Below, in pieces: positions 13,601-63,323 of a stretch of 64,000 nt of DNA. The notes under the pieces were generated by a model. It made no database searches, was not told the DNA's origin, and saw only the letters and a program-made list of their open reading frames with translations. The stretch's first letter is position 1; each line of letters opens with the position of its first letter. Position numbers and translations under genes: made by a program. This stretch comes from Macrostomum lignano (Eukaryota): contig NIVC01000103.1 of the NCBI GenBank assembly GCA_002269645.1, forward strand, positions 617,393 to 681,392, in the 5' to 3' direction.

Positions 13601-14510
13601 CTCTCATGCCTTATAAATTGATAGCTGACCAGACCATGCAGTCTATCTTGCATCTCGAAAAAGGTGCCATGTGCCATATATCTCCAAAACTTACCCCATA
13701 ACTCAAAGATCTCTTGATCTTTCTACTTCTCTGCTCTCAATTCTCATTTCTCCTTTACTATATAGCACGCACTCTTCTCTCGTGTCATCTTCTCTCGATC
13801 TCTCTCTCATCTTTCAATATGTACTTGATGTATCTGATATGTTATATGTATTCTTTTCTATCCCCTCGCCTGCACTCTGATCTCATATTTACCCCAACGT
13901 GAGGAATCAGGAATAAGAATTTGAGCTTGAGATTAAGAAATTGGCAAAACATTAGCAAAAGCTGGGTATACCTGCACATCAGTTCCACTCTCATGCCTTA
14001 TAAATTGATAGCTGACCAGACCATGCAGTCTATCTTGCATCTCGAAAAAGGTGCCATGTGCCACATATCTCCAAAACTTACCCCATAACTCAAAGATCTC
14101 TTGATCTTTCTACTTCTCTGCTCTCAATTCTCATTTCTCCTTTACTATATAGCACGCACTCTTCTCTCGTGTCATCTTCTCTCGATCTCTCTCTCATCTT
14201 TCAATATGTACTTGATGTATCTGATATGTTATATGTATTCTTTTCTATCCCCTCGCCTGCACTCTGATCTCATATTTACCCCAACGTGAGGAATCAGGAA
14301 TAAGAATTTGAGCTTGAGATTAAGAAATTGGCAAAACATTAGCAAAAGCTGGGTATACCTGCACATCAGTTCCACTCTCATGCCTTATAAATTGATAGCT
14401 GACCAGACCATGCAGTCTATCTTGCATCTCGAAAAAGGTGCCATGTGCCATATATCTCCAAAACTTACCCCACAACTCAAAGATCCCTTGATCTTTCTAC
14501 TTCTCTGCTC
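10676..14510 (+). repeat. 387-bp tandem array, right arm (~10 near-identical units)
   Basis: Identical short ORFs start at 10962, 11349, 11736, 12123, 12510, 12897, 13284, 13671 and 14058 (step 387). Confidence 0.98.
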
Positions 14511-15599
14511 TCTGCTTTTACAACAATTAAGAAAAGAAACTCGATTTTTACTGAGCCCCATGCAACATCCTGTAGCCTCTGGATGCGCCCCTGCTGGCAC
14601 ATGATAGCCGCGTAAATGCATATTTAAAGCAACTCGGTGTTGTAGTTATGCACTCAGGCTCGTCGCCATGGATTTTATGGTGGGTGACAAAGCCAAGATT
14701 TCTACTACATGTAAATGTACACGACGAAATTCCTACACGTACATTACTATCAGAATCCGTGTTGTCAGCACTCATTTCAGCGCCGCAGGTACTCATTTTA
14801 GCGCCGCAGGCACTCATTTTAGCGCCACAGGTACTCATTTTTAGCTCCGCAGCCACTCATTTTTAGCTCCGCAGCCACTCATTTTTGCGCCACAGGCCTC
14901 ATTGTATATAGACAAATTTCCACTTACAAGCTTTAATTTAAACTGAAGAAAATGGTAACAAAACTGGTATAAAATAGTCTATTTTTATAAATGACTGAAT
15001 GGCCCTTAGCAGCTAATAACATTTTGCTTTTAGAGCGTAGTATATCTTTATTAATTCATCATTTTTTGTACAACTCGTATATCCGGAAAGTAGTTAGTTA
15101 GTAGTTAGTAGTAGTTAGATAGTAGATAGTAGGATCTCTAGTAGGATACTAAAAGTAGTATGAGCGAAACATGTGCACTATAGTTTAGGGACATACACTA
15201 GCATAATGTTGTAAGGTCGCAATTCATCATTATATTTTAAAGATGGCCCGAAGAAATGGTCCTTTTCCACTCACACGTCCGATTTCTTTTCCAGATGGAA
15301 CCTGCTAACTTTAGTGCTGCAGCTGCCGCCCCTGCCGCAAAAATAGAAAATAGAATGTCTTAGAATACAATGGAATAGAACGTAATAGAATAGAATGAGA
15401 AATAGAAAATTTCCAGATACAAAATATTGGAAGAAGTTTAAGAACCGATTTTACAGATACTAAAAATCAGTGTTGCGTTGAATGCAAAACGGTTTATCAG
15501 GGATCAAGTATGCTACAGTTTACATATCGACATTGTCATATTGGCATTGTTAAACACTAAATGTCAAGATGGCGCGAAATCTTGGCGACTAATGACTGA

Positions 15600-16259: not shown

Positions 16260-16545
16260 AGTATAAAAGGTAACGAAATAAGTGCTCTTTGGCTCCATTA
16301 ATCAAAACAGTTTAGCGCCAGTTTATAAACTGAGTGACAGTTCATCACTGCATTAAACTGAATTAATTAACGTTAACAGGTCCGCTACGTGTAAGCAGAG
16401 CACATGGACCCAGGAATGATACAGCTGAGCAGCGAATTCACAGCACACTTGAGCTATTGTGTGCAAGTGAGGTTAAAAATGACATCTATTGGCACAGCAA
16501 TTTTTAATTACCACTTTATACGATAATTTTAATGATTGCAAGTGC
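16260..16545. repeat. Third, partial copy of the shared 3' trailer, downstream of the ZnF-CXC gene
   Basis: gtataaaaggtaacgaaata...gacatctattggcacagcaattttt matches ~18019-18267 and ~19851-20100. Confidence 0.93.
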
Positions 16546-16647
16546 TTGAGAATAAACTGTTAAATTAATTTTGTATTTCTGCTCGCTCAGAGATTGCCAT
16601 TACAGTGAGTAGGAGAAGGGGTCGGGGTTCAAGGACTATTAAAAGGT

Positions 16648-17466
16648 CTAATCAGCAAATCGATTGCTTTTTGGGGAAGAGGACACCAGGTTTGGATCAA
16701 ATTTAGTTACTTTAACTTCATGTGACGATTTCCGTCTGCGAATAACGGGTTGTGGAACTATTGTGAGAGGAACAATTGCTTTAGGCTTGAGAGGAATAGG
16801 AACTGGGCCGATTGCAGCGGGGAATTTTTTTCCTGGAGATTTTTTTAAATTTCCTAGTGAGCATCTAGGAATACAATTGGCAATTTCTTTTGTTGATGTA
16901 GCACAAGGCAGTCTTGGTGCACCACAGTTGCACCCAGAAAATGTGCAATGCCGATCAGATTGCTTAGGACTAGATGCCGCAGTAGAAGTTGAGGCTGCAA
17001 CAGGTTGTGAAGCTGCACGGAGTGGAGCAACGTTGTCTGTCTCGCTTATTTCGTAATTATAAACCAGATGTTGAATGTCCAGGACTACTTGATCGAATGG
17101 AGCATAGTGGATGGGCACTTCTTTTACAACTGCCAAGTCGCGAAGCTCTGCCAGACGTACGGAAGCTTGTTTTCTCATTCGCTTAGTAGCAGCCCGACCT
17201 GCCAGGTCTTTTCTACGACTTGGAGTTTGAAATTCGGAAGCATGGTTGTTTCGAAAGTGCATTCTAGGGCAAGAAATCATATCCTGGCAGAGAGGGCAGA
17301 GAGCCACAGACTTGGCCTTCGAATTGGCTTTAGACAGATCAATCATGGCCTGAATCTGCTCATCAGTTGTGGTAGGGTGAAACTTTTCCCGATGTCGCCA
17401 CAATTGGTACGTTCTACCAGTCCATGAGCACAAAAAGCAACAGATTTTTGCGTGTTTATTAGGCAT
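16648..17466 (-). CDS. 272-aa protein with two atypical C2H2 zinc fingers and a C-terminal CXC-like Cys cluster; paralogue of the N-terminus of the SET protein
   Basis: Single open frame from ATG 17466. Fingers CFLC-x11-H-x4-H and CPLC-x9-H-x4-H are followed by a basic helix (GRAATKRMRKQASVRLAEL) and later C-x4-C-x-C-x6-C-x9-C-x3-C. Confidence 0.75.
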   Translation of the reverse strand: MPNKHAKICCFLCSWTGRTYQLWRHREKFHPTTTDEQIQAMIDLSKANSKAKSVALCPLCQDMISCPRMHFRNNHASEFQTPSRRKDLAGRAATKRMRKQASVRLAELRDLAVVKEVPIHYAPFDQVVLDIQHLVYNYEISETDNVAPLRAASQPVAASTSTAASSPKQSDRHCTFSGCNCGAPRLPCATSTKEIANCIPRCSLGNLKKSPGKKFPAAIGPVPIPLKPKAIVPLTIVPQPVIRRRKSSHEVKVTKFDPNLVSSSPKSNRFAD

Positions 17467-17816
17467 GGCTAAAACAGTTGTTGAATAATTGGATTGGTGT
17501 TTTAGAAGACTTAATTTCAATGCGTCGAGTGGCTAGCTGAAATAAGTATAGCATTGTTTTTTTAGTAACTGAAGAAAGTCAGTAGCAAAAGTTACATCTA
17601 GTTAAAGCTGATTGAATTATGGGGACAGGGTTGCACTGTATAATATTAGTAAGTATAACTAAATAACCATAGGGTACCATTATACAAAAAGAGATTAGTA
17701 TGACTGAATGGCCTGGAGAAAAGATAACAGCACTCCTGGCTGAGGGGTCCGTATCAAGTATGACATCAAGACTGATCAAGTATTCGATGCTGACTTCTTA
17801 TAGATAGCGCAAAGTT

Positions 17817-18406
17817 TAGGCCTACAGCTAGGGTCTTAAGTCGATTCTAAGGTGTCGATTCTATGGATTTGAGAATGGCAATCGGGATCGAAAACTGAGT
17901 CCTAACTAATATTGACGACTTAAAAATGAGAAAAAGCAACCAACATATCGTTTAATAACACCATAACGGGCGAAAATGTCAACTTAACGGCAGTTTAATT
18001 TTCATGCAATGAAGTGTAGTATAAAAGGTAACGAAATAAATAAGTGCTCTTTGGCTCCGTTAATCAAAACAATTTAGCGCCAGTTTATAAACTGAGTGAC
18101 AGTTCATCACTGCATTAAACTGAATTAATTAACGTTAACAGGTCCGCTACGTGTAAGCAGAGCACATGGACCCAGGAATGATACAGCTGAGCAGCGAATT
18201 CACAGCACACTTGAGCTATTGTGTGCAAGTGAGGTTAAAAATGACATCTATTGGCACAGCAATTTTTGAATAATTTTATTGCAAGTGCTTTGGAAACAGC
18301 CGACACAATAAATCACTGTGTAATTGAAGTGTTCAGCTAACTAAAAAATTTAAACTTGCTCAAAAAGTATCTTCTGAATCATCCGATTCAGACGCTGAAG
18401 ACTCAG
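17817..18406. repeat. ~580-bp direct repeat, copy 1 (copy 2 at 19664-20239); includes the last ~15 codons and 3' trailer of the KDZ gene
   Basis: Near-identical to 19664-20239 apart from a 14-bp local duplication; both end in ...gacgctgaagactcag. Confidence 0.95.
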
Positions 18407-18471
18407 GTAAAGCAGATGTGCGAAGGACAGTAACCTAGGAATGTAGACAGTGCGAACGACATGCGAAAAAA

Positions 18472-19470
18472 TTAAGAGTTTAGCCACGGAAACTTTTGCA
18501 AACACTCTTCATCTCGTTCACCATAATCATAAAGCAACTCAATTCCCTTGGGAATATTATGTAATGCAAAAAATCCTATTCGGCTTGTGTGGCGTCCAAT
18601 GTCTTTGCAAGGTGATATGACACTAGGAACCAAGTTTGGGTTCAGTCGACTATGATTAATATAGCGACCTACAGAATCAGTGAGGGTAGCGTCTTCGCAT
18701 AATGATTTTGAACCATAAAAATAGAAAAAGGCGAATGCGGGCGAATCTCCTTCGCGAGATCGCTTTTCTTCCCTAGCCGCCCCTTCTTTTTTGGATAAAA
18801 CTGCTCCACCATAGAAACAGACGAATGACTTCGCCTTGATATTCTCATCAGAAAACAGTCCATAACCCTTCTCACCCGCTAACTGAACTGTAACTTTTGC
18901 CGGAAGAAGTTTTGAGGCTTTTGTATAGATTCGGAGACAAGACTGTTTACCAGCCCGCGACTCTTGTTCTCTGTGGGAGGATATACAAAGATATTTTTAG
19001 GTTTATACAACCGTTTACATGTCTGATCAAATCTTGAAAAGCAGGATAGGCAATAACATTACTCACCTCTCGTGCAATCCCTGTTTTTCGTTCTCGTAAC
19101 TTGAATCCGGATACCGTGGCAAAGGCTGGTCGGCAATAAAACACCAGTACAGTTCTCCGAATCGCCGCAGAGCACGTTTTCTCGCCAACCTGATAGCTGG
19201 TTGTCCAGTTAATAAGGAGTTAAGACGCCTGTAATCGCCCGCATGACATTTAGCGTAGTGATCTCGCAAATTTACAGCAAACTGATCACATAGCGCGCAT
19301 AATTTTACATCTGACTTTCTGGACCAACGAAGATATTGAATTATGCAACTTGCTCTTTTAGCGTCTAAAGCATGCTTTTTAGTTGCATGCAAAAGAAGTC
19401 GATCAGCTCGAGCACTATAGGTACTTAAACCAGGAAGACACAGAGGGCACTCGTACTTTTCAGTCGTCAT
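18472..19470 (-). CDS. 300-aa zinc-finger + SET-domain lysine methyltransferase, PR-Set7/SETD8 (KMT5A)-like; exons 19470-19067 and 18970-18472
   Basis: The GT-AG intron 19066-18971 (gtgagt...cctcccacag, 96 nt, phase 2) joins the frames (404+499=903 nt). Exon 2 translates GEKGYGLFS...FVCFYGG...AAREE...FFYFYGSKSLCEDAT...GRYINHS...FFALHNIPKGIELLYDYGERDEECLQKFPWLNS*, colinear with the SETD8 SET domain (GKGRGV, VEYHG, KKREA, YYFQYLSKTYCVDAT, GRLINHS, ELLYDYGDRS, HPWL). Confidence 0.93.
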
Positions 19471-19663
19471 GGTAGATTTGTGATCGTAGCCAAAGATTGA
19501 TAGATTATTACCACAAAAAAGAGTAAATTAATTGATTTTTGCCGACTCGTTTCAGATAACACAATCACTTTCGGATTTCAATAAGAAATCTGTAAAAAGG
19601 TGGACACATGTCGACATGAAAGACAGATTGATTGAGTACTAAATCTTTGTGATACTAAAAACT

Positions 19664-20239
19664 TAGGACTACAGCTAGGGTCTTGAGTCGATTCTATGGA
19701 TTTGAGAATGGCAATCGGGATCGAAAACTGAGTCCTAACTAATATTGACGACTTAAAAATGAGAAAAAGCAACCAACATATCGTTTAATAACACCATAAC
19801 GGGCGAAAATGTCAACTTAACGGCAGTTTAATTTTCATGCAATGAAGTGTAGTATAAAAGGTAACGAAATAAATAAGTGCTCTTTGGCTCCGTTAATCAA
19901 AACAATTTAGCGCCAGTTTATAAACTGAGTGACAGTTCATCACTGCATTAAACTGAATTAATTAACGTTAACAGGTCCGCTACGTGTAAGCAGAGCACAT
20001 GGACCCAGGAATGATACAGCTGAGCAGCGAATTCACAGCACACTTGAGCTATTGTGTGCAAGTGAGGTTAAAAATGACATCTATTGGCACAGCAATTTTT
20101 GAATAATTTTATTGCAAGTGCTTTGGAAACAGCCGACACAATAAATCACTGTGTAATTGAAGTGTTCAGCTAACTAAAAAATTTAAACTTGCTCAAAAAG
20201 TATCTTCTGAATCATCCGATTCAGACGCTGAAGACTCAG
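19664..20239. repeat. ~580-bp direct repeat, copy 2 (native 3' end of the KDZ transposase gene)
   Basis: Matches 17817-18406. Confidence 0.95.
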
Positions 20240-22704
20240 TCGCCGACTCAGTTGGCGAGTCGTTGCTAATAGGAGGAACATTTTCAATGCTTTGTTCTGC
20301 GCCGCCCAAAATGAGTCGAAAATATTCTGCCCTTGCTGGAACGTCAAGATTTACAACTCTTTCTAAAATTGATCGAAATAGTTTTCGAAACTGAGCCGCC
20401 AAACCAGCCTGATTATCTAGACTCTTGCAAACCATGTCCATTTTTACAATAAAGTCATACCATTCCTCAGATACGATATGCAGTTCCTCATTCACTCTGT
20501 CGTACTTATGATAGAGATCGATTGCACGCCGACGGAAACGGACAGAAGTAGCTGATTCAGATAAACCATCGTACTTTGAACTATTTGGCTTCCGATACTG
20601 ATCAAAAGAACCCCGGGTCTCTTCCGGCAGACGATTAATATCAGCTTTCATTTCTGAAGTCAAACCTTGTACACGGCGCAAGCAAGCTCTGTTATGACCT
20701 TGGCCCATATTTAGTCCAGACTGTCGCAGCCAATGTTCTCTGAGAACTGCAAGCGAACGAATATTAGATAGAAGGTCGTTTTCAGAGTTTTCTACTGCGC
20801 CTATAAGAGAGTTCTGATGCCACTGACGGCCGAGATTCCGAATTTGAACCTCCGAAAGTACTAAGCTTCCGTCTAAAATTCCGGAAGCTTGCTGTATTCG
20901 TGCATCATCAAGAAGTGAGTTCATTTCCGAAGACATGTTTTTTATCGTACTGTCCAAAAGTCTGAGACGTTGCTGGAACCACTGGGGTGTGTTAAACAAT
21001 TGATTCGCATTGAAATGAAACAGAATTTGAGACATACAGGTGCTCCTACGATCAGGTCGCATGTACTTTAGTGAATGCCCATATGGGCGAAGTTGTGCCC
21101 AAGCTCTCTCTGTGTTCTCGCCATCACACAAGCCCGCTCCAGGAGTGACACGCACAGAGAACCTTCTTTGGCAGCTTGGTTTGTGGCCAAGTGCGTGGAA
21201 TGCATTGATGGCACATGAAGAGGCCTGTACGTTAGCACCAGATTTAGTAACTGCGGATTGTACGCGAGCTGAAACGCGGCAGCCTGCAGTGAGATGTGAG
21301 AAAAATGTATGTACTTTATTTTGATCCCGCTAAATTATACGGACATAGTATGCAAAAGATGCACTTACCAACGTCATAGATAAGAAGCAATTTCTTCGAT
21401 ACAGACGTGTCTCTTAGAAAATGCTCAAGGCACTGTTCTATGTAGCAGAACCGCTCTCCTGTCGTAGTAATGTTACAACCATTCAATAGACGATTGTGCC
21501 GGCAAAAAAGTCCAAAAAAGCCATACACATCATGTCTACCAGCACCTCGGGATGGTGGCTCGAGCGCCCCAGCTTTCCAACTTGGACAGTTTTGTTCTTC
21601 TAAGCGATTTTTTGGCGCGTCTGCTTTGACATCTACATTCACTAATGGAACAGGAAGCGGACGACCATCTGACGGAGTTAGAGCTTGCCTGAATCCCATT
21701 GAAGAAAATCTTTGCCAGCCGAAAAGCGCATCAGCACAAACAACAGTCTGGCGATCATTATGCTGATCGGGACACAAGAGACACGACTTGGGCCATTTTG
21801 CTGAGCGGATCTGTAATTGTCTAAATTTTAGCAGAACACAGTGGCGTTGCAGACGTTGATACAAACTTGATGCTAATTTATCTCTGCAGATTCCTTGGCC
21901 AACAGTAGCACCTAAAAACAGGGCTTTGATTGCCCTGTGAGCCGGTAGTCGACCTACAGTAGTCAAATTGTCGAGAAGTGTTAATAAACTTATGGCGAAA
22001 TAGGCTGTGCAGTCTGTGGCGGTTGCGGTTGCATCATAAGACGGGAAGTAACCCATTGAGAGAAGCGCATCCACTTTGTCACATGAACTACACGTAAACA
22101 TCTGAGCTTGAACGATTCCCGACAAATCGATTAGCTCAACAGTTGATGCAGCCGACAATTCGCGAGCCTCTCTGCTTGCCACACAACAGAAAAGTGCAGC
22201 AACCATGGGCACGTGCACTGGATCTGCAAACATAAGCGTCTCAGAATTCCACTGTTCAAATTTGTGTGGTGCAAAATCACCATGTGTGATTTCTTTACAG
22301 TCTTCACAGAAATCCAGCCTACAAGTGACACACCGATAAATTCCAGGCGCATCACTGCAACGAATGCATGAACCCAAGTTGAAATAATTTTCATACGCAT
22401 TGCTGTGAAGATCCGAAAACATGGAATGATCCTCCCACTCAGTTTCTTCAGGCGGATTTGAAGGTTCAGTAGAATTTTCAGGCGGCATTTCGGCTGCATT
22501 ATCAGGCATTTCAGGAAAAAAATAATTCCCTACCGACTGATCCTGATGAGAACCATAAGCAGAGCTTGAGCTAGGACGACGGGTGGCACCAAAACCAGAA
22601 GATTTCTGGAGCTTTCTTGGACGTCCTCGACGGCTTGTCCGCAATACAGCTTCGACATCACTATCAGAATCTGTATTAGAAAACAATGTTCTGCGGCGAG
22701 ACAT
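20193..22704 (-). CDS. KDZ (Kyakuja-Dileera-Zisupton) superfamily transposase, 808 aa; exons 22704-21369 and 21283-20193
   Basis: The intron 21368-21284 (gtaagt...cactgcag, 85 nt, phase 1) restores YDVG|C and fuses the two track ORFs (1336+1091=2427 nt, no stop). Motifs: AT-hook RRGRPRK; Cys cluster CxxC-x8-CxxC-x4-CxxC-x4-H-x5-H; LLSMGYFP; CLLCP; CADALF; FCRH; GERFCY; YDVGC; FHALGHKPSCQ; GAGLCDGENTERAWAQL; acidic tail. Confidence 0.9.
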
Positions 22705-25385
22705 GACCTGAAATGTTTTAATGCAAATTGTAATTCAAGAGTATGTATGTATGTATGTATGACTTCAATATTATACTATTAGACGTATTTATTCATACAG
22801 ATTCATACATATCTGAACACACATTTGTCCAAAAATGACACTTTGGATTTGTATGATATAATGAATAAACACTGATGTAAATCATTGTTATAAATTACTT
22901 TTGTACCTACCAAAACCAATACGTAGTAACTTTAAGCTTATTATGTATGCATTACTATTCTGATATATTTGTCTACTTTATAGCATATAAAAATGTGTGA
23001 GTGCAATGTATGTGAAAAAAGATTCAGTATTAATTATTATATTTTTATATATTTATATTTTATCTATTCTTTAATCCTTTCTCTTACCTTTCCTTTCTCT
23101 TATTGCCTATTCATTCTTCTTTCTACTCTTATCTGCCCCTCAGCCTTTATCTGGCTCTCTCTCATATACTCTCCCAGTTGTGCTCTTAAGGGACATAGTA
23201 CTCTCATAGTTGTTTCATTCTATGGCCTACTTGTTGACTGCTTTGATTGCATCATCTTTCTAGCCAATTTTTCAGTCTTGAGAAAAACTACATGTATACA
23301 TTTTTAGCTCCACAGTGCCACATATCTGATATTGTGGCTAACCTAGGGCTGATGCTTTAAAGTTTGTTTAATTAGTAACTAATCATATATATAAACCTTT
23401 GCCTAAGAAAATAATACAAGTCAATGAAATAGTCTTTTTAAAAATGAATGATTATTTAAAAGGACCCTAAACTAACAAGAATACAATCCACTTTGGTAAC
23501 AGCCACTTCGGTAAAGCAGATTTATGACTTTTAGCACTTTTTCTTTATGTTAATTTTTTAGTAACTATTAATTAAATTAATCATTAACTTGTTTAGTACT
23601 TTATTGCTGATTACCATTCAATTTTTTCTGATTAGGATATATTATACATGTAATTTGTTTCAACTTGAACAGATAGAATATATAACAGCGGAGACTTAGA
23701 GAGATCAATGAAAGTAATTAATGACAAATAAATTAAAGTAAATACTGAAATTTCACATTTCTAACTCAAAGTAATTCTAATTACACAATACTTTGGTAAT
23801 TACAAGTTTTATAGGTTGTATCATAACATATCTTGAGTATCAAGCGCACCTGGAAATTTAAATAGATTGATCAAAACACATTAAAACAATTTTATCATTG
23901 TTGGCTAAATCATTGTCTAGGCCTAAAACATTATTTTTTGTCTCAAAAACTATTTGAAATTATTTTTTAGAGCACATTAAGATACATATTGTTATATCTC
24001 CTCCCTTGTTACCAAAATGGACTGTTACCACTAACAATACATTAAATACAAGTGCTAAAAATCCTAGGAGCTAAAGTGGCTAAAATAAAGGAGAAAGTCT
24101 CAAAAATCTTCCAAATAAAGCCAGGAGATAAAGGAGATAAAGGAAGGTGTAGGCACCCTGCATTTATCCACTTATTCTATTGAATCAAATATACTAAATA
24201 TCTATACTAGGCCTATACTATTTTTGTATAGCATGTTCTCTAAGGGCTGCAGGGCAAAGCATTCAAAAAGGACAAAAAAGTGAAAAAAATTAATCATGAA
24301 TATCATGGAAGAATATAGATATAGCCTATAGACTATAGTGTATAGCCTTGCAAGGCTTGCAATTGCAATTTAGCCTTGCAATTTTAACCATAAGCTTATA
24401 GTTAAAATTGCCTTGGTTGACTTGCAATAGTTTTGGGCCACTTATTCATCTTGTTAATATTAGTGATAAGTCTTGGCCAGGGGGTGCATGACCAAGATGG
24501 CCACACACCAAGATGGCCACAGTTTATTAAAATGTCTAAATAGATAATATGATGCTCATTTCCTTATTATAATTGGTCACAATTGGTCTTAAGGTATGTC
24601 TGTGAGAGCTGTGTCTTATTTGCCCTATAACTATAAGCCAAGTTTTAACATGAAGATTAAATAAAGATCAAGATCCACTATTTGCAAACTCAATATTTTA
24701 AGTTAAAAAGGCAATAAATATATGCTCGAACAATTTAAACCCACCTGCAACTTGGCTAGATACTAAATTTTCCAAAAGGGCTTTCCAGACATGAGTCCAA
24801 AAATTGAAGTAAGCAGAAGCAAGTAACTGTATAATTATCCACGAAACTAAAAATGAAGTGTCTGTATGTATGCAAGTATATCTAATAGTAAGTAAGTAAG
24901 CTTGGCTCAGGCAAGAAGCCTGTTTGGCCAGTATATGTCAGTGTATTTATTATTAATAATAATTCAATAGATAAACTAGATATGAGCGGCTAATTCGGCA
25001 ATAATATAGTATTTGAAAGAGTGTTAATATTTTTTTCTACGAAACTTCAAACGATCTTTAACGATAAACCCGCCGCGGAAGCCATGCAAATTTCGCGACA
25101 GAATCCCCAAATCAGCATTTGAAGTTGCTTACTATCATTTTAAAGCTATCGCTGCTGTAGTAAGTACTTTAGTCACTTTTTGATGTATTAATTTCCATTG
25201 CCAATGAATGGGGCTCAAGAGTATACTAATAGTAGACTTGTTTTATAAACGATTAGAACATTTGTCCAAAAACGACACTTTTGATATTTTAATCCCAAAT
25301 GGATAAAAATGAAAATCATTGCTACGAAAACTATGATTAATGTGCATGAAAATACAAAATAGAATAAAAAAATACTATGAGATAT

Positions 25386-28300
25386 CTCAAATCGGCGCTG
25401 GAAAGCTCAAATTGGCGCGGAAAGCTCAAATTGGCGCCGAAAGTCAAATTTGGCGCCAGGATCACCAAATCGGCGCCAGTATCGCCAAATCAGCGCCGGA
25501 ATGCTGAAATCAGCGCTAAAAAGCCCGGACCAGCGATGGAAAGCTCAAATCGGCGCTGGAAAGCTCAAATTGGCGCGGAAAGCTCAAATTGGCGCCAAAA
25601 GTCAAATTTGGCGCCAGGATCACCAAATCGGCGCCAGTATCGCCAAATCAGCGCTGGAATGCTGAAATCAGCGCTAAAAAGCCCGGACCAGCGCTGGAAA
25701 GCTCAAATCGGCGCTGGAAAGCTCAAATTGGCGCGGGAAAGCTCAAATTGGCGCCGAAAGTCAAATTTGGCGCCAGGATCACCAAATTTGGCGCCAGTAT
25801 CGCCAAATCAGCGCCGGAATGCTGAAAACAGCGCTAAAAAGCCCGGACCAGCGCTGGAAAGCTCAAATTGGCGCGGAAAGCTTAAATTGGCGCCGAAAGC
25901 CAAATTTGGCGCCAGGATCACCAAATCGGCGCCAGTATCGCCAAATCAGCGCCGGAATGCTGAAAACAGCGCTAAAAAGCAGCCGGAAAGCTCCAGCGCT
26001 GGAAAGCTCAAATTGGCGCGGAAAGCTTAAATTGGCGCCGAAAGCCAAATTTGGCGCCAGGATCACCAAATCGGCGCCAGTATCGCCAAATCAGCGCCGG
26101 AATGCTGAAAACAGCGCTAAAAAGCCCGGACCAGCGCTGGAAAGCTCAAATCGGCGCTGGAAAGCTCAAATTGGCGCGGAAAGCTCAAATTGGCGCCGAA
26201 AGTCAAATTTGGCGCCAGGATCACCAAATCGGCGCCAGTATCGCCAAATCAGCGCCGGAATGCTGAAAACAGCGCTAAAAAGCCCGGACCAGCGCTGGAA
26301 AGCTCAAATTGGCGCGGAAAGCTCAAATTGGCGCCGAAAGTCAAATTTGGCGCCAGGATCACCAAATCGGCGCCAGTATCGCCAAATCAGCGCCGGAATG
26401 CTGAAAACAGCGCTAAAAAGCCCGGACCAGCGCTGGAAAGCTCAAATTGGCGCGGAAAGCTCAAATTGGCGCCGAAAGTCAAATTTGGCGCCAGGATCAC
26501 CAAATCGGCGCCAGTATCGCCAAATCAGCGCCGGAATGCTGAAAACAGCGCTAAAAAGCCCGGACCAGCGCTGGAAAGCTCAAATCGGCGCTGGAAAGCT
26601 CAAATTGGCGCGGAAAGCTCAAATTGGCGCCGAAAGTCAAATTTGGCGCCAGGATCACCAAATCGGCGCCAGTATCGCCAAATCAGCGCTGGAATGCTGA
26701 AAACAGCGCTAAAAAGCCCGGACCAGCGCTGGAAAGCTCAAATCGGCGCTGGAAAGCTCAAATTGGCGCGGAAAGCTCAAATTGGCGCCGAAAGTCAAAT
26801 TTGGCGCCAGGATCACCAAATCGGCGCCAGTATCGCCAAATCAGCGCCGGAATGCTGAAAACAGCGCTAAAAAGCCCGGACCAGCGGAGCTCAAAGCGCT
26901 GGAAAGCTCAAATTGGCGCGGAAAGCTCAAATTGGCGCCGAAAGTCAAATTTGGCGCCAGGATCACCAAATCGGCGCCAGTATCGCCAAATCAGCGCCGG
27001 AATGCTGAAAACAGCGCTAAAAAGCCCGGACCAGCGCTGGAAAGCTCAAATTGGCGCGGAAAGCTTAAATTGGCGCCGAAAGCCAAATTTGGCGCCAGGA
27101 TCACCAAATCGGCGCCAGTATCGCCAAATCAGCGCCGGAATGCTGAAAACAGCGCTAAAAAGCCCGGACCAGCGCTGGAAAGCTCAAATTGGCGCGGAAA
27201 GCTTAAATTGGCGCCGAAAGCCAAATTTGGCGCCAGGATCACCAAATCGGCGCCAGTATCGCCAAATCAGCGCCGGAATGCTGAAAACAGCGCTAAAAAG
27301 CCCGGACCAGCGCTGGAAAGCTCAAATTGGCGCGGAAAGCTTAAATTGGCGCCGAAAGCCAAATTTGGCGCCAGGATCACCAAATCGGCGCCAGTATCGC
27401 CAAATCAGCGCCGGAATGCTGAAAACAGCGCTAAAAAGCCCGGACCAGCGCTGGAAAGCTCAAATTGGCGCGGAAAGCTTAAATTGGCGCCGAAAGCCAA
27501 ATTTGGCGCCAGGATCACCAAATCGGCGCCAGTATCGCCAAATCAGCGCCGGAATGCTGAAAACAGCGCTAAAAAGCCCGGACCAGCGCTGGAAAGCTCA
27601 AATTGGCGCGGAAAGCTCAAATTGGCGCCGAAAGCCAAATTTGGCGCCAGGATCACCAAATCGGCGCCAGTATCGCCAAATCAGCGCCGGAATGCTGAAA
27701 ACAGCGCTAAAAAGCCCGGACCAGCGCTGGAAAGCTCAAATTGGCGCGGAAAGCTTAAATTGGCGCCGAAAGCCAAATTTGGCGCCAGGATCACCAAATC
27801 GGCGCCAGTATCGCCAAATCAGCGCCGGAATGCTGAAAACAGCGCTAAAAAGCCCGGACCAGCGCTGGAAAGCTCAAATCGGCGCTGGAAAGCTCAAATT
27901 GGCGCGGAAAGCTCAAATTGGCGCCGAAAGTCAAATTTGGCGCCAGGATCACCAAATCGGCGCCAGTATCGCCAAATCAGCGCCGGAATGCTGAAAACAG
28001 CGCTAAAAAGCCCGGACCAGCGCTGGAAAGCTCAAATCGGCGCTGGAAAGCTCAAATTGGCGCGGAAAGCTCAAATTGGCGCCGAAAGTCAAATTTGGCG
28101 CCAGGATCACCAAATCGGCGCCAGTATCGCCAAATCAGCGCGGAATGCTGAAAACAGCGCTAAAAAGCCCGGACCAGCGCTGGAAAGCTCAAATTGGCGC
28201 GGAAAGCTTAAATTGGCGCCGAAAGCCAAATTTGGCGCCAGGATCACCAAATCGGCGCCAGTATCGCCAAATCAGCGCCGGAATGCTGAAAACAGCGCTA

Positions 28301-31028
28301 AAAAGCCCGGACCAGCGCTGGAAAGCTCAAATTGGCGCGGAAAGCTTAAATTGGCGCCGAAAGCCAAATTTGGCGCCAGGATCACCAAATCGGCGCCAGT
28401 ATCGCCAAATCAGCGCCGGAATGCTGAAAACAGCGCTAAAAAGCCCGGACCAGCGCTGGAAAGCTCAAATCGGCGCTGGAAAGCTCAAATTGGCGCGGAA
28501 AGCTCAAATTGGCGCCGAAAGCCAAATTTGGCGCCAGGATCACCAAATCGGCGCCAGTATCGCCAAATCAGCGCTGGAATGCTGAAATCAGCGCTAAAAA
28601 GCCCGGACCAGCGCTGGAAAGCTCAAATCGGCGCTGGAAAGCTCAAATTGGCGCGGAAAGCTCAAATTGGCGCCGAAAGTCAAATTTGGCGCCAGGATCA
28701 CCAAATCGGCGCCAGTATCGCCAAATCAGCGCTGGAATGCTGAAACAGCGCTAAAAAGCCCGGACCAGCGCTGGAAAGCTCAAATCGGCGCTGGAAAGCT
28801 CAAATTGGCGCGGAAAGCTCAAATTGGCGCCGAAAGTCAAATTTGGCGCCAGGATCACCAAATCGGCGCCAGTATCGCCAAATCAGCGCCGGAATGCTGA
28901 AAACAGCGCTAAAAAGCCCGGACCAGCGCTGGAAAGCTCAAATTGGCGCGGAAAGCTAAATTGGCGCCAAAAGCCAAATTTGGCGCCAGGATCACCAAAT
29001 CGGCGCCAGTATCGCCAAATCAGCGCCGGAATGCTGAAAACAGCGCTAAAAAGCCCGGACCAGCGCTGGAAAGCTCAAATTGGCGCGGAAAGCTCAAATT
29101 GGCGCCGAAAGCCAAATTTGGCGCCAGGATCACAAATCGGCGCCAGTATCGCCAAATCAGCGCCGGAATGCTGAAAACAGCGCTAAAAAGCCCGGACCAG
29201 CGCTGGAAAGCTCAAATCGGCGCTGGAAAGCTCAAATTGGCGCGGAAAGCTCAAATTGGCGCCGAAAGTCAAATTTGGCGCCAGGATCACCAAATCGGCG
29301 CCAGTATCGCCAAATCAGCGCTGGAATGCTGAAATCAGCGCTAAAAAGCCCGGACCAGCGCTGGAAAGCTCAAATCGGCGCTGGAAAGCTCAAATTGGCG
29401 CGGAAAGCTCAAATTGGCGCCGAAAGTCAAATTTGGCGCCAGGATCACCAAATCAGCGCCGGAATGCTGAAAACAGCGCTAAAAAGCCCGGACCAGCGCT
29501 GGAAAGCTCAAATCGGCGCTGGAAAGCTCAAATTGGCGCGGAAAGCTCAAATTGGCGCCGAAAGTCAAATTTGGCGCCAGGATCACCAAATCGGCGCCAG
29601 GATCCCTTAATCAGCGCTGGAATGCTGAAATCAGCGCTAAAAAGCCCGGACCAGCGCTGGAAAGCTCAAATCGGCGCTGGAAAGCTCAAATTGGCGCGGA
29701 AAGCTCAAATTGGCGCCGAAAGTCAAATTTGGCGCCAGGATCACCAAATCGGCGCCAGTATCGCCAAATCAGCGCCGGAATGCTGAAATCAGCGCTAAAA
29801 AGCCCGGACCAGCGCTGGAAAGCTCAAATCGGCGCTGGAAAGCTCAAATTGGCGCGGAAAGCTCAAATTGGCGCCGAAAGTCAAATTTGGCGCCAGGATC
29901 ACCAAATCGGCGCCAGTATCGCCAAATCAGCGCCGGAATGCTGAAAACAGCGCTAAAAAGCCCGGACCAGCGCTGGAAAGCTCAAATCGGCGCTGGAAAG
30001 CTCAAATTGGCGCGGGAAAGCTCAAATTGGCGCCGAAAGTCAAATTTGGCGCCAGGATCACCAAATTTGGCGCCAGTATCGCCAAATCAGCGCCGGAATG
30101 CTGAAAACAGCGCTAAAAAGCCCGGACCAGCGCTGGAAAGCTCAAATCGGCGCTGGAAAGCTCAAATTGGCGCGGAAAGCTCAAATTGGCGCGAACGTCA
30201 AATTTGGCGCCAGGATCACCAAATCGGCGCCAGGATCCCTTAATCAGCGCTGGAATGCTGAAATCAGCGCTAAAAAGCCCGGACCAGCGCTGGAAAGCTC
30301 AAATCGGCGCTGGAAAGCTCAAATTGGCGCGGGAAAGCTCAAATTGGCGCCGAAAGTCAAATTTGGCGCCAGGATCACCAAATCGGCGCCAGTATCGCCA
30401 AATCAGCGCCGGAATGCTGAAAACAGCGCCAAAAAGCCCGGACCAGCGCTGGAAAGCTCAAATCGGCGCTGGAAAGCTCAAATTGGCGCGGGAAAGCTCA
30501 AATTGGCGCCGAAAGTCAAATTTGGCGCCAGTATCGCCAAATCAGCGCCGGAATGCTGAAAACAGCGCTAAAAAGCCCGGACCAGCGCTGGAAAGCTCAA
30601 ATCGGCGCTGGAAAGCTCAAATTGGCGCGGAAAGCTCAAATTGGCGCCGAAAGTCAAATTTGGCGCCAGGATCACCAAATCGGCGCCAGGATCCCTTAAT
30701 CAGCGCTGGAATGCTGAAATCAGCGCTAAAAAGCCCGGACCAGCGCTGGAAAGCTCAAATCGGCGCTGGAAAGCTCAAATTGGCGCGGAAAGCTCAAATT
30801 GGCGCCGAAAGTCAAATTTGGCGCTAGGATCACCAAATCGGCGCCAGTATCGCCAAATCAGCGCCGGAATGCTGAAAACAGCGCTAAAAAGCCCGGACCA
30901 GCGCTGGAAAGCTCAAATCGGCGCTGGAAAGCTCAAATTGGCGCGGAAAGCTCAAATTGGCGCCGAAAGTCAAATTTGGCGCCAGGATCACCAAATCGGC
31001 GCCAGGATCCCTTAATCAGCGCTGGAAT
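25386..31028. repeat. GC-rich satellite with 139/158-bp units built from ~19-20-bp subunits (aaagctcaaattggcgc core), ~37 units
   Basis: ORF starts step by 158 (27918-28076, 29552-29710-29868). The 139-bp variant lacks one 19-bp subunit. Confidence 0.98.
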
Positions 31029-31293
31029 GTGCCAACGGGCGTAGAAGTGGCAGCATATATCAGCTTGCTACTTTTGGGCGCCAATTTTAATTTACCGGCG
31101 CCAATTTTAGCCTTTCGGCGCCCATTTTAGCGCCCTGGCAAGGTCATTGCATTTAGTTCTCACGCAATGGAGCCGAAAAAAGAGTTTTTTTTCTTTTTTG
31201 AATTAGTGCCATGTATCTTGACAACCAATGCGAGTCAAGTTCTGGCGTCTGCTTCTCCACAGCCCCGTAATGGCATATCCTAATAATTGTGGG

Positions 31294-31695
31294 CTGGCCC
31301 GCGCTAAGGGAGCCCACCCCACCGTGGGGCGGACCCCGCTAACGGGCTATTTTTAGCGTGGGATGGGCTCCGCTAACGGGCGGCCATAAACTGAAAACGA
31401 AACGCGTTCTGGGAGTTTTTTAAATTTGGAAGAGTTGGGAAAGACAAAGAGCCGTCTTCATCCAGCATACATTAATATACGAGAAATGAGTCACGGATGT
31501 GCAGCGTTTTCAGCTAGCTTCATTGCTAGTACAGTGCTAGTACGCTAGTGCGCACTACCGTCCACACTCACCCCACACCCACCCCTCTCCGCTTGTGGGC
31601 TGGCTTCCGCTAAGGGAGCCCATCCCACCGTGGGCTGGGTACCGTTAGCGGGCTATTTTTTGCGTGGGATGGGTCCCGCTAGCGGGAAGCCGTTA
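31294..31695. repeat. Pair of ~95-bp diverged GC-rich direct repeats (31294-31385, ~31595-31695)
   Basis: tgtgggctggc..cgctaagggagccca.cccaccgtggg...cgggctattttt.gcgtgggatggg.. occurs twice; the first copy is also at ~48535-48630. Confidence 0.8.
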
Positions 31696-32557
31696 GGTGT
31701 CGTTTTAGCTGCAAGGAATTGCAATCTTTCAATACTTAACGCGTTTCATTCAACTAATAGTATCCGACTTTTCAATACCTATCATTTATTAAACTATAAT
31801 TGAATCAGTTTAACCTTAAGGTTCAGAGATTTTTAATCCTAAGCTTTTTATCTTTATTTTATCCCAAAGGTAAGCAAACGTGGCCGGTTGGTCCTAAATT
31901 GCATTGTACTCATTATATTTTCTTTTATTATGTCTAGCTTAGCTTAGAATTGCATTATGCTACGAATCTATAGTCTTTTATGCTCCTAAATTTAGTGGAA
32001 ATTTGGTCAAAGAAGAATAATACAGGCACAAGAAGCGAGGCACATTTTCGTTCTGAACGTTTTTATAGCAAAATAAGGTATACCAAACGAGTTATTGATA
32101 AGTGATAGACAGACCAATTTCCAATTTCCAATTTCCTAATTCACAAAGTGCTGTTTTTCTAATTTGTGGATGTCTGATAAAGGCATAAAATCAATCGCCT
32201 CTGTACTTGTATTTGTCATTTAATATATACTGCATCCGTTTGTAAATATTATGCGAAAAAGACAGAGAAAATAAGTTTTGAATTTCAACACGAAGTTAAA
32301 ACAAACTAAAAATTTAAACAAAATTCAAATTGACGCGAAAATTAAAAATCTCACATTCGTTAAATTCAAAATTAAAAAATTAATTTACTCGTACGATCAA
32401 AGGACACTGGACACTAGGTTGCTATCTACATGCGATAGCAATTCCACTTTAACTTATGGGCTTTGCCCTTATTTTGTTCACTGCATAGATTTTTGTGTAG
32501 ATCTAGTCTTATCTCTCTTAAGAGTCATGTCTATGAGAGTTATATTTTAACGTTGTA

Positions 32558-63100: not shown

Positions 63101-63323
63101 GCAGGACTTTGTCATCCGGCAGGACATGGCCTGCGGCTCCACTATCGGGCCGATTCTAGCCGCTAAAGTTGGCCTGCCAACTATTGATGTTGGTTCGCCA
63201 ATATTCGGCATGCACAGCATCCGGGAGACTGGAGCGGCTGCTGCCCCTGGCCAGGGTGTGCAACTGTTCTCCGCCTTTTTCAAGCACTTCCCAGCTCTGC
63301 GGGAGGCTATGGAGACTCAGTGA
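60147..63323 (+). CDS. DNPEP: Aspartyl aminopeptidase (peptidase family M18), 480 aa; exons 60147-60464, 60886-61089, 62403-63323
   Basis: Motifs [75 protein letters not shown] and MHSIRE. Both introns are GT-AG phase 0; total 1443 nt. Confidence 0.95.
60545..60720. repeat. Intronic ~25-bp purine minisatellite (gagggtgaggagagggtggggaaat)
   Basis: Visible tandem units in DNPEP intron 1. Confidence 0.9.
61135..61975. repeat. Intronic 30-bp minisatellite (gtgtctatgggtgggttgtgtgggtccttt)
   Basis: Units align at 30-nt steps in DNPEP intron 2. Confidence 0.95.
62125..62330. repeat. Intronic 21-bp minisatellite (gcagtgtctgtagatgtgctg)
   Basis: A 7-aa repeat (CAGSVCR) appears in the ORF translation upstream of the true exon 3. 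Confidence 0.93.

What the first reader, a model, noticed from the sequence alone, without database searches (positions are those of the whole stretch)
16260..22704. KDZ DNA transposon locus carrying its own PR-Set7/SETD8-type histone methyltransferase plus a zinc-finger partner
SEEN: three compact co-oriented genes (KDZ transposase, ZnF-SET, ZnF-CXC) lie within 6.1 kb. All are open, and each is followed by the same 3' trailer, so they are physically and historically linked. ESTABLISHED: fungal KDZ elements travel with chromatin/DNA-modifying cargo (TET/JBP dioxygenases), Zisupton elements carry a Ulp1-type protease domain, and SETD8/PR-Set7 is the H4K20 monomethyltransferase. INFERENCE: this looks like an animal counterpart in which the cargo is a histone writer. 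The element might use it to set its own chromatin state or to influence repair of its excision breaks, since H4K20 methylation state governs 53BP1 versus TONSL/BARD1 recruitment. I do not know of a described KDZ + SET8 element but cannot verify novelty.
Basis: partly seen in the sequence, partly recalled or inferred. Interest (0 to 1): 0.93.

Follow-up and report, generated by a model that had tools for sequence, protein, structure and literature searches.

The report
Flatworm KDZ transposon carrying SET8 gene
The three genes are real and form the coding core of a giant, very recently mobile KDZ DNA transposon of the flatworm Macrostomum lignano, which carries its own SET8-type lysine methyltransferase fused to zinc fingers. 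No such cargo turned up for a KDZ element or an animal DNA transposon in the papers I could search.

Summary
On the minus strand lie a KDZ transposase (808 aa, Pfam KDZ E=1.6e-31), a zinc-finger + SET protein (300 aa; best sequence and fold matches are human SET8/KMT5A) and a third zinc-finger protein (272 aa). Each is followed by the same 3' trailer. The window is Macrostomum lignano contig NIVC01000103.1.

The genes sit inside an element that starts at window 31393 (minus strand) with 5'-CAGTTTATGGCC. That same terminus abuts five unrelated flanks in the assembly. Copies have no substitutions in about 5.2 kb of unique sequence, so movement was recent. The element is at least 23 kb long. It holds about 5.6 kb of a 20-bp repeat near its 5' end and a 387-bp satellite downstream.

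A second lineage (47% identical transposase) has a homologous terminus, the same 20-bp repeat and the same three genes in a different order. A third lineage appears in another sequencing run. One copy has precisely lost the SET cassette by recombination between trailers.

Not found: the 3' end, target-site duplications, expression data, enzyme activity. The 'CXC' label for gene 3 has no database support. Transposon-borne SET genes are known in oomycetes and TET/JBP cargo in fungal KDZ elements, so this is a new variant of a known kind.

The parts
31277..31393 (-). 5' terminal module of the lineage-A element. The terminus is at 31393 and reads 5'-CAGTTTATGGCCGCCCGTTAGCGG on the minus strand.
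   Evidence: The same 24-mer abuts five unrelated flanks: window 31393, window 48639, L011:1767, L014:1738, L016:2222. It aligns with the lineage-B terminus CAGAGCATATTCCCAGGCTAGCC.
25386..31029 (-). Subterminal array of the 20-bp motif GCGCCRATTTGAGCTTTCC, organised in 138/158-bp higher-order units.
   Evidence: TRF. The pattern gives 133 matches in the window against 0.02 expected; all but two (3-mismatch, plus strand) lie on the minus strand, and all fall in or just beyond this array and the second 5' end. The same motif forms the array in lineage B.
22705..25385 (-). 2.7-kb unique leader between the repeat array and the KDZ start codon.
   Evidence: 100% identical in L001, L011, L013 and L014; no substitutions (3 gap positions) in L016.
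21369..22704 (-). KDZ transposase, exon 1 (N-terminal B-box-like and Cys clusters, first half of the KDZ domain).
20193..21283 (-). KDZ transposase, exon 2 (second half of the KDZ domain, long C-terminal region, stop codon).
   Evidence: The spliced 808-aa product is 100% identical to P0004.
19687..20239 (-). 3' trailer, copy 1. It starts in the last roughly 45 nt of the KDZ coding sequence and contains an AATAAA.
19067..19470 (-). ZnF-SET gene, exon 1: two C2H2-type fingers plus a linker.
18472..18970 (-). ZnF-SET gene, exon 2: SET8-type catalytic domain, ending ...FPWLNS, then stop.
17854..18406 (-). 3' trailer, copy 2 (100% identical to copy 1). Together with the ZnF-SET gene it forms an 1833-bp cassette.
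   Evidence: The cassette is precisely absent in L011.
16648..17466 (-). Third gene ('Z3'), 272 aa. It has the same dual-finger N-terminal module as ZnF-SET, then a basic region, a short Cys cluster and a Pro/Lys-rich tail.
   Evidence: No Pfam or PDB match.
16260..16508 (-). 3' trailer, copy 3 (partial, 97%).
7973..15584 (.). Downstream part shared by copies at different sites. In order: 1.07-kb unique stretch (15584-14513), 387-bp satellite (14512-10676), 250-bp centre with a 19-bp hairpin (10675-10427), inverted 387-bp satellite (10426-9049), inverted unique stretch (9048-7973).
46973..48639 (-). Second, truncated 5' end of the same element family: terminus, 1.5 kb of array and 116 bp of leader, then a break.
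31593..31706 (-). Third, diverged copy (84%) of the terminal module, just outside the main element.

Best explanation
The three genes are the coding core of a giant (at least 23 kb), recently active DNA transposon of the KDZ superfamily in Macrostomum lignano.

Shown:
- The element begins at window 31393 (minus strand) with 5'-CAG.
- Reading inward it has a roughly 117-nt terminal module, a 5.6-kb array of a 20-bp motif, a 2.7-kb leader, the KDZ transposase gene, a ZnF-SET8-type methyltransferase gene and a second ZnF gene.
- Each gene is followed by the same trailer. Satellite-rich sequence follows.
- The same gene trio, a homologous terminus and the same 20-bp motif define a second lineage whose transposase is only 47% identical. 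The SET and ZnF genes are therefore long-standing cargo that has co-diverged with the transposase, not a chance neighbour.
- The two accessory proteins share one N-terminal two-finger module.
- The SET domain keeps every residue that is invariant in an alignment of 38 SET8-like proteins.

Inferred:
- The trailer supplies a common 3' UTR and polyadenylation signal.
- Because it is repeated, it lets [gene + trailer] cassettes be duplicated, reordered or lost by unequal recombination.
- The shared finger module brings the methyltransferase and its partner to one target. The most likely target is the element's own 20-bp repeat arrays or the transposase complex.
- There the SET8-type domain monomethylates a lysine, H4K20 by analogy with SET8. 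This would tune the chromatin, replication or repair context of the element.
For: Gene identities:
- KDZ Pfam E=1.6e-31; SET E=7.6e-16.
- SETD8/KMT5A is the best hit by sequence and by fold, with the top 19 Foldseek hits and target TM-score up to 0.87.
- All 9 invariant and 15 near-invariant columns of a 38-sequence SET8-like alignment are present: GxG, Y188, NHS, ELLYDYG, PWL.

Mobility:
- The identical 24-nt terminus abuts five unrelated flanks. One flank lies 236 bp from a host PDZ gene.
- Lineage B has two junctions at the homologous nucleotide.
- Copies show 0 substitutions in the 5.2 kb of leader plus KDZ.
- KDZ clusters at 90% identity or more sit on many contigs.

Cargo status:
- SET lies between the 5' terminus and sequence shared by copies at other sites, down to window 7973.
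- SET is present in the window, L001, L003, L013 and L014, and is precisely deleted in L011.
- Lineage B (L005, L010, L015) has KDZ, then Z3, then ZnF-SET, with its own duplicated trailer.
- Lineage C: the KDZ contig L006 and the ZnF-SET contig L007 come from the same read set, SRR19430222.

Repeat motif:
- 133 matches of the 20-bp motif against 0.02 expected, and the same motif in lineage B.
Against: - The 3' end, target-site duplications and any empty site were not found. 'Transposon' therefore rests on 5' junctions only.
- All copies come from one assembly that its users describe as redundant (PMC12801592). L001 and L003 share the window's visible downstream sequence; their 5' junctions are not in the fetched DNA.
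- The flanks are themselves repeat-rich, and two of them share repeats with flanks of the other lineage.
- One otherwise identical copy lacks the SET cassette, so SET is not needed in cis.
- On the SET domain alone the three ZnF-SET proteins do not form a clade in a neighbour-joining tree, 0 of 50 bootstraps. That run produced invalid (NaN) distances for the most divergent pairs and was not repeated, so it is not informative either way.
- I saw no expression, small-RNA or activity data.
- Substrate, target and benefit to the element are inference.
Confidence: 0.8

Rival explanations
1. The SET gene is a passenger: a host-derived gene captured by the element and carried along with no benefit to transposition. 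It may be functional for itself or on its way to decay.
For: One copy (L011), identical elsewhere, has lost the whole 1833-bp SET cassette by trailer-to-trailer recombination. Capture of host genes by DNA transposons is common. The SET-domain tree does not resolve a dedicated clade.
Against: The ZnF-SET architecture with all catalytic-motif residues is intact in three lineages whose SET proteins are only 35-41% identical and whose transposases are 41-47% identical. That implies long purifying selection in linkage with KDZ. Its finger module is shared with the other accessory gene of the element, which looks like a built-in system rather than a random capture.
Confidence: 0.12
2. It is not a transposon but a heterochromatic amplicon. 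A satellite-embedded gene cluster was copied by segmental duplication, polyploidy and assembly redundancy, and the KDZ gene is a relic or a domesticated host gene working with the SET protein.
For: The locus lies between satellite arrays. M. lignano is partly polyploid (my own recollection) and its assembly is described as redundant. L001 and L003 share the window's visible downstream sequence. No TIR or target-site duplication was found. One contig holds two copies tail to tail.
Against: Five junctions in lineage A and two in lineage B break at exactly the same, homologous nucleotide into unrelated sequence, once next to a host PDZ gene. The window holds a solo truncated 5' end. There are no substitutions between dispersed copies. 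Segmental duplication does not predict one fixed breakpoint.
Confidence: 0.06
3. The SET gene is simply the host's PR-Set7/SETD8 orthologue that happens to lie beside a KDZ insertion.
For: SETD8 is the best match by sequence and fold.
Against: It is multicopy, lies inside the mobile block and is absent from one copy. Its N-terminus is a two-finger module shared with the neighbouring gene rather than a SETD8 N-terminus. A paralogue sits beside the second KDZ lineage.
Confidence: 0.01

Closest known systems
Fungal KDZ (Kyakuja, Dileera, Zisupton) transposons carrying TET/JBP dioxygenase genes (Iyer et al. 2014, not held here; Kojima 2025, PMC12730594)
   Same: Same transposase superfamily (Pfam KDZ). 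Large elements. A chromatin or DNA-modifying enzyme encoded as a separate gene next to the transposase and spread with it. The 5'-CA start and the absence of a detectable TIR resemble Kyakuja, which has 5'-CA..TG-3' termini, no TIRs and 7-bp target-site duplications.
   Different: The host is an animal (a flatworm), not a fungus. The cargo is a SET8-type lysine methyltransferase plus a zinc-finger partner, not a dioxygenase. There are huge internal 20-bp and 387-bp repeat arrays. The 3' end and target-site duplication are unknown, and the assignment to Kyakuja, Dileera or Zisupton was not tested.
Oomycete DNA transposons encoding SET-domain proteins: HarbingerS and MuDR families (Repbase Reports 2014, cited in PMC12730594) and the proto-Helentron of Phytophthora infestans (PMC4067079)
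   Same: A SET-domain histone-methyltransferase-like gene carried as transposon cargo, proposed to act on the element's chromatin.
   Different: Different transposon superfamilies and a different kingdom. The proto-Helentron SET is Clr4/Suv39-like (H3K9 type), whereas this one is SET8-type with fused C2H2 fingers.
Human SET8 / PR-Set7 / KMT5A, the H4K20 monomethyltransferase
   Same: The catalytic domain is the best match by sequence and fold. It has an N-flanking helix, no pre- or post-SET Cys clusters, and a C-terminal ...PWL motif at the very end of the protein.
   Different: About 25% identity in the structural alignment. The N-terminal half is replaced by two C2H2-type fingers. It is transposon-borne and multicopy. 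Substrate untested.
SETMAR/Metnase (primate SET gene fused to a mariner transposase)
   Same: A SET domain and a transposase are functionally coupled at one locus.
   Different: SETMAR is a host gene that captured a dead transposon's transposase as a fusion. Here an active transposon carries a separate SET gene (papers listed).

Membership tests
KDZ transposase superfamily (Pfam PF18758) | Full-length match to the KDZ catalytic domain | tested here: met
   E=1.6e-31, profile positions 3-216 of 217 after splicing. Lineage B gives 4e-34.
KDZ transposase superfamily (Pfam PF18758) | N-terminal CxC-type cysteine clusters associated with KDZ transposases | tested here: inconclusive
   CxC1 scores E=0.002-0.03, below the curated cut-off. 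There is a B-box-like Cys/His cluster at residues 112-149. One source names a truncated copy a 'CxC2 domain-containing protein'.
KDZ transposase superfamily (Pfam PF18758) | A mobile element with defined ends, present at several genomic sites | tested here: met
   The 5' end is defined to the nucleotide at five sites in lineage A and two in lineage B. The 3' end was not found.
Kyakuja clade of KDZ | 5'-CA..TG-3' termini, no TIRs, 7-bp target-site duplications (PMC12730594) | tested here: inconclusive
   A 5'-CAG start was found. No inverted copy of the terminus exists in any fetched DNA. The 3' end and target-site duplication were not found.
Kyakuja / Dileera / Zisupton | Placement in a transposase phylogeny with reference sequences | not tested
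SET8 / PR-Set7 / KMT5A type of SET domain | SET domain whose closest relatives by sequence and fold are SET8 | tested here: met
   PDB phmmer gives SETD8 at 4e-13, ahead of EZH2 at 4e-11. Foldseek ranks 1-19 are all SET8, including Cryptosporidium SET8.
SET8 / PR-Set7 / KMT5A type of SET domain | Cofactor and catalytic motifs (GxG, NHS, ELLYDYG tyrosines) and the C-terminal PWL flank, with no pre- or post-SET Cys clusters | tested here: met
   All invariant and near-invariant columns of a 38-sequence alignment are present. The alignment to SETD8 runs to the last residue.
SET8 / PR-Set7 / KMT5A type of SET domain | Orthology to the host gene: single copy, conserved neighbourhood | tested here: not met
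   It is multicopy, lies inside the mobile block and has been lost from one copy. A host M. lignano SET8 could not be retrieved for comparison.
SET8 / PR-Set7 / KMT5A type of SET domain | Monomethylation of histone H4 K20 | not testable with these tools
   Needs an enzyme assay.
Transposon with chromatin-modifier cargo | The cargo gene lies within the element and recurs in independent copies and lineages | tested here: met
   SET lies between the 5' terminus and sequence shared by copies at other sites. It is present in two lineages of M. lignano and a third elsewhere.
CXC domain (Tesmin/TSO1 or EZH2 pre-SET type), claimed for gene 3 | Match to a CXC profile | tested here: not met
   No Pfam family at E<=1 and no PDB relative. 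Only a short Cys cluster is present, and it is not alignable between lineages by BLASTP.

The most novel reading that the evidence does not exclude
This is an animal DNA transposon that encodes its own targeted histone writer. The two-finger module shared by the SET8-type enzyme and its partner would recognise the 20-bp motif, which the element carries in more than a hundred near-exact copies. The element would thereby paint itself with H4K20 methylation, or methylate a repair or replication factor there. It would thus control its own chromatin, replication timing or break repair independently of the host.
Probability: 0.2. Interest if true: 0.88.

Novelty: new variant of a known kind. Interest (0 to 1): 0.68.

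Why it matters
Transposons that carry enzymes acting on chromatin or DNA marks are rare. Known cases are TET/JBP in fungal elements, SET in oomycete elements and DNA methyltransferases in some protist retroelements. They are windows on the arms race over silencing.

This appears to be the first KDZ element with a SET gene, and the first animal DNA transposon with a SET8-type writer, that I could find. It sits in a flatworm, and to my knowledge (not checked here) RNAi, transgenesis and germline/stem-cell transcriptomics exist for this species.

Nature has provided controls. There are near-identical copies with and without the SET cassette, and a second lineage with the same gene set. Whether the cargo helps the element, and what H4K20-type methylation does at a transposon, therefore becomes directly testable.

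The element also shows how a shared 3' trailer can turn accessory genes into swappable cassettes.

Tried and rejected
- **Terminal inverted repeats.** No inverted 12-mers between the unique flanks. No inverted copy of the terminal 60 nt in the window or in any locus.
- **Target-site duplication** for the truncated copy at 48639: the flank 7-9-mers occur nowhere else in the window.
- **3' end.** Copies at different sites stay identical down to window 7973, and lineage B for more than 10 kb past the genes. Contigs end in repeats, so no 3' junction was seen.
- **SET-domain tree.** Neighbour-joining on 147 sequences and 141 columns is a star. The three ZnF-SET proteins do not cluster, 0 of 50 bootstraps. 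The run produced invalid (NaN) distances for the most divergent pairs and was not repeated, and an earlier attempt timed out.
- **dN/dS.** Copies within a lineage differ by 0-2 substitutions in coding sequence, and between lineages synonymous sites are saturated. No usable estimate.
- **Host SET8 of M. lignano.** It could not be retrieved. The word-index protein search returned only 1-3 hits per query and no eukaryotic genome collection is searchable.
- **P0003**, the closest hit outside Macrostomum, sits among housekeeping genes on an unidentified contig and has no KDZ neighbour.
- **ZnF+SET8-like proteins from metagenomes** (the P0100 cluster, P0079) have no detectable KDZ on their short contigs.
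- **Iyer et al. 2014** is not held in the library, so I could not check whether it mentions SET neighbours of animal KDZ genes.
- **The organism of SRR19430222** could not be identified.
- **The bacterial promoter/terminator scan** of the trailer is irrelevant for a eukaryote and found nothing.

Full report
**What is there.** The window is Macrostomum lignano contig NIVC01000103.1. The fetched locus L002 matches window 29470-8472 at 100%. Three co-oriented genes lie on the minus strand between 22704 and 16648.

- KDZ transposase: exons 22704-21369 and 21283-20193, with a GT..AG intron. The spliced product is 808 aa, matches Pfam KDZ end to end (E=1.6e-31) and equals the annotated protein BOX15_Mlig001681g7.
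- ZnF-SET: exons 19470-19067 and 18970-18472, 300 aa. It equals BOX15_Mlig001681g4.
- Third gene, here called Z3: a single ORF, 17466-16648, 272 aa. It has no Pfam or PDB match and is not in the protein collection.

**The SET domain is SET8-type.**
- The best PDB sequence hits are SETD8/KMT5A (4e-13).
- An AlphaFold model has pLDDT above 90 over most of residues 161-300.
- Its 19 best structural matches are all SET8, with target TM-score up to 0.87.
- Every invariant or near-invariant column of a 38-sequence SET8-like alignment is present.

**The trailer.** The 553 nt at 20239-19687 are repeated exactly at 18406-17854, and 254 nt recur at 16508-16260. The 'CXC' label for gene 3 is the only part without support.

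**It is a transposon, and a large one.** Protein clusters show that the KDZ gene is multicopy in the assembly. Fetching those copies gave the decisive result. Reading the minus strand, similarity between copies starts at one nucleotide, window 31393, with 5'-CAGTTTATGGCCGCCCGTTAGCGG. Immediately outside that point the sequence differs entirely in five cases:

| Site | Position |
|---|---|
| Window, main element | 31393 |
| Window, truncated copy | 48639 |
| L011 (NIVC01001431.1) | 1767 |
| L014 (NIVC01000306.1) | 1738 |
| L016 (NIVC01000176.1) | 2222; a host PDZ-domain gene ends 236 bp away |

- Inside the block, dispersed copies show no substitutions across the 2.7-kb leader and the 2.5-kb KDZ gene. 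The only differences are single-base gaps near contig ends.
- The copy in L011, which has a different 5' flank, stays identical to the window down to 7973. The element is therefore at least 23.4 kb long.

**Anatomy, reading inward from the terminus.**
1. A roughly 117-nt terminal module.
2. A 5.6-kb array built from the 20-bp motif GCGCCRATTTGAGCTTTCC. There are 133 matches in the window against 0.02 expected; all but two weak plus-strand matches are on the element strand.
3. The leader.
4. The three genes with their trailers.
5. 1.07 kb of unique sequence.
6. A 387-bp satellite that is partly palindromic.

I found no terminal inverted repeat, no 3' terminus and no target-site duplication. The 5'-CA start and the lack of TIRs recall Kyakuja as characterised in PMC12730594. 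Clade assignment was not tested.

**The SET gene is cargo, not a neighbour.**
- Within lineage A, SET is present in the window, L001, L003, L013 and L014. L014 is demonstrably at a different insertion site.
- L011 lacks exactly the 1833-bp [ZnF-SET + trailer] cassette. One trailer remains where the window has two. This shows that the trailers recombine and that the accessory genes behave as cassettes.
- A second lineage (L005, L010, L015) has a transposase only 47% identical. It has the same three genes in the order KDZ, Z3, ZnF-SET, and its own 295-nt trailer after both KDZ and SET.
- Lineage B's 5' terminus, CAGAGCATATTCCCAGGCTAGCC, aligns with that of lineage A. It abuts different flanks in L005 and L010. 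Its subterminal array uses the same 20-bp motif.
- A third lineage is visible in Logan assemblies of run SRR19430222. One contig holds an intact KDZ gene with its two visible introns at the same positions as in lineage B (41.5% identical to the window's, L006). Another holds a 349-aa two-finger + SET8-like gene (L007). Linkage cannot be seen on those short contigs.

**The accessory proteins share a module.** ZnF-SET of all three lineages and Z3 of both M. lignano lineages begin with the same pair of C2H2-type fingers (CxxC..R..L..H....H, a spacer, then CxxC....H....H). On the SET domain alone my neighbour-joining tree is unresolved and the three ZnF-SET proteins do not cluster. That run also produced invalid distances for the most divergent pairs and was not repeated. 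The case for their common origin therefore rests on the shared finger module and the shared genomic context. Two-finger + SET8-like proteins also occur in marine and other metagenomes, one as a 13-member cluster, but no KDZ is visible on those short contigs.

**How it most likely works.**

*Shown:*
- A mobile block with a fixed 5' end.
- A complete transposase.
- A SET8-type enzyme with intact motifs.
- A finger module shared by the two accessory proteins.
- A conserved 20-bp repeat in more than a hundred near-exact copies.
- Cassette loss by trailer recombination.

*Inferred:*
- The trailer is a common 3' UTR and poly(A) region. It contains an AATAAA. The shared locus-tag numbers of the KDZ and SET genes suggest to me that their transcripts were grouped together (my reading of the tags, not checked).
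- The fingers direct both accessory proteins to one target. My best guess is the element's own repeat arrays or the transposase complex.
- The enzyme monomethylates H4K20, by analogy with SET8, or a non-histone lysine. This would affect the chromatin, replication or repair context of the element.

I put about 0.8 on 'KDZ transposon with conserved ZnF-SET8 cargo' and about 0.2-0.3 on the self-targeting mechanism. That one identical copy has lost SET shows the gene is not needed in cis. A trans-acting function, or none, both remain possible.

**Comparison with what is known.** Fungal KDZ elements carry TET/JBP dioxygenases (PMC12730594). SET genes are carried by oomycete HarbingerS and MuDR elements (cited there) and by a Phytophthora proto-Helentron, where the SET is Clr4-like (PMC4067079). 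SETMAR is the reverse case, a host SET gene that captured a transposase.

Full-text searches for KDZ, Kyakuja or Zisupton with SET, for SET-carrying DNA transposons, for M. lignano transposons and for SETD8 with transposons gave no description of a KDZ + SET element or of an animal DNA transposon with a SET8-type gene. Iyer et al. 2014, Repbase and Dfam could not be consulted. I therefore rate it a new variant of a known kind, with that caveat.

**Caveats.**
- Everything rests on one assembly that its users describe as redundant.
- L001 and L003 share the window's visible downstream sequence. Their 5' junctions are not in the fetched DNA, so I could not tell whether they are the same locus.
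- The surroundings are repeat-rich.
- An unexplained structure lies just outside the main terminus. It consists of a 232-bp unit that also abuts the lineage-B terminus in L010, in the opposite orientation, and a third, diverged terminal module at 31706-31593. It suggests nesting next to older element ends.

Noticed in passing
window 31394-32367; L010 1081-1979: The 232 bp just outside the lineage-A terminus are 89.7% identical to the sequence abutting the lineage-B terminus in L010, but in the opposite orientation. Beside them lies a third, diverged (84%) terminal module starting CACCTAACGGCTTCCCGCTAGCGG. Beyond that is a 69% match to more of the L010 flank. This may be a nesting hot spot at old element ends.
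   Followed up: partly
window 1-7501 and 38759-46490: A block of about 7.4 kb is repeated in direct orientation at 98.35% identity. It contains G-rich tandem arrays and a reverse-transcriptase fragment (ORF 7029-7703, RVT_1 E=3e-5). One copy follows the truncated left arm of the 387-bp satellite palindrome and the other follows the truncated second 5' end. It may be another mobile element or part of a rearrangement.
   Followed up: partly
window 9049-14512: A 387-bp satellite (99% between units) is arranged as two inverted arrays around a 250-bp centre. The centre holds a perfect 19-bp inverted repeat (GTAGCTGCGTTCTCATTGG ... CCAATGAGAACGCAGCTAC). On contig NIVC01001431.1 two whole elements lie tail to tail across this satellite.
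   Followed up: partly
window 51430-60051: An 8.6-kb array of a 24-bp unit (ACAAACACGAGAAGAGACAGGCAG, about 357 copies, 91% matches) has almost no T on the plus strand. This creates spurious ORFs of up to 2897 codons in several frames.
   Followed up: no
window 62130-63323 (+): This ORF has a strong match to aminopeptidase I / M18 zinc metalloprotease (PF02127, E=1.9e-90). It is presumably an exon of an ordinary host gene at the edge of the repeat-rich region.
   Followed up: no
window 49843-50572 and 61116-61970: Two further tandem arrays, with 31/61-bp and 30-bp units.
   Followed up: no
P0008 (Holothuria leucospilota KAJ8048607.1): A sea-cucumber protein annotated as set-1 consists of eight tandem partial SET8-like repeats. 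It was the second-best hit of the ZnF-SET protein in the representative library. SET8-like sequences may be amplified in other invertebrates too.
   Followed up: no
P0100 cluster (Tara Oceans contigs, e.g. L008) and P0079 (L009): Proteins with two N-terminal C2H2-type fingers and a C-terminal SET8-like domain occur in marine and other metagenomes, one as 13 near-identical members on separate short contigs. That pattern is typical of a repeated element. No KDZ is visible on those contigs.
   Followed up: partly
L005 14217-14241 versus L010 13925-14542: The Z3-like gene of lineage B is an intact 205-codon ORF in L010 but is frameshifted in L005. This is either a copy-specific mutation or a long-read indel error. 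Single-base gaps are common near contig ends in this assembly.
   Followed up: partly
L007 160-330: Upstream of the lineage-C ZnF-SET gene lies a sequence I read as a tRNA-derived SINE. ARAGORN finds no tRNA gene there.
   Followed up: partly
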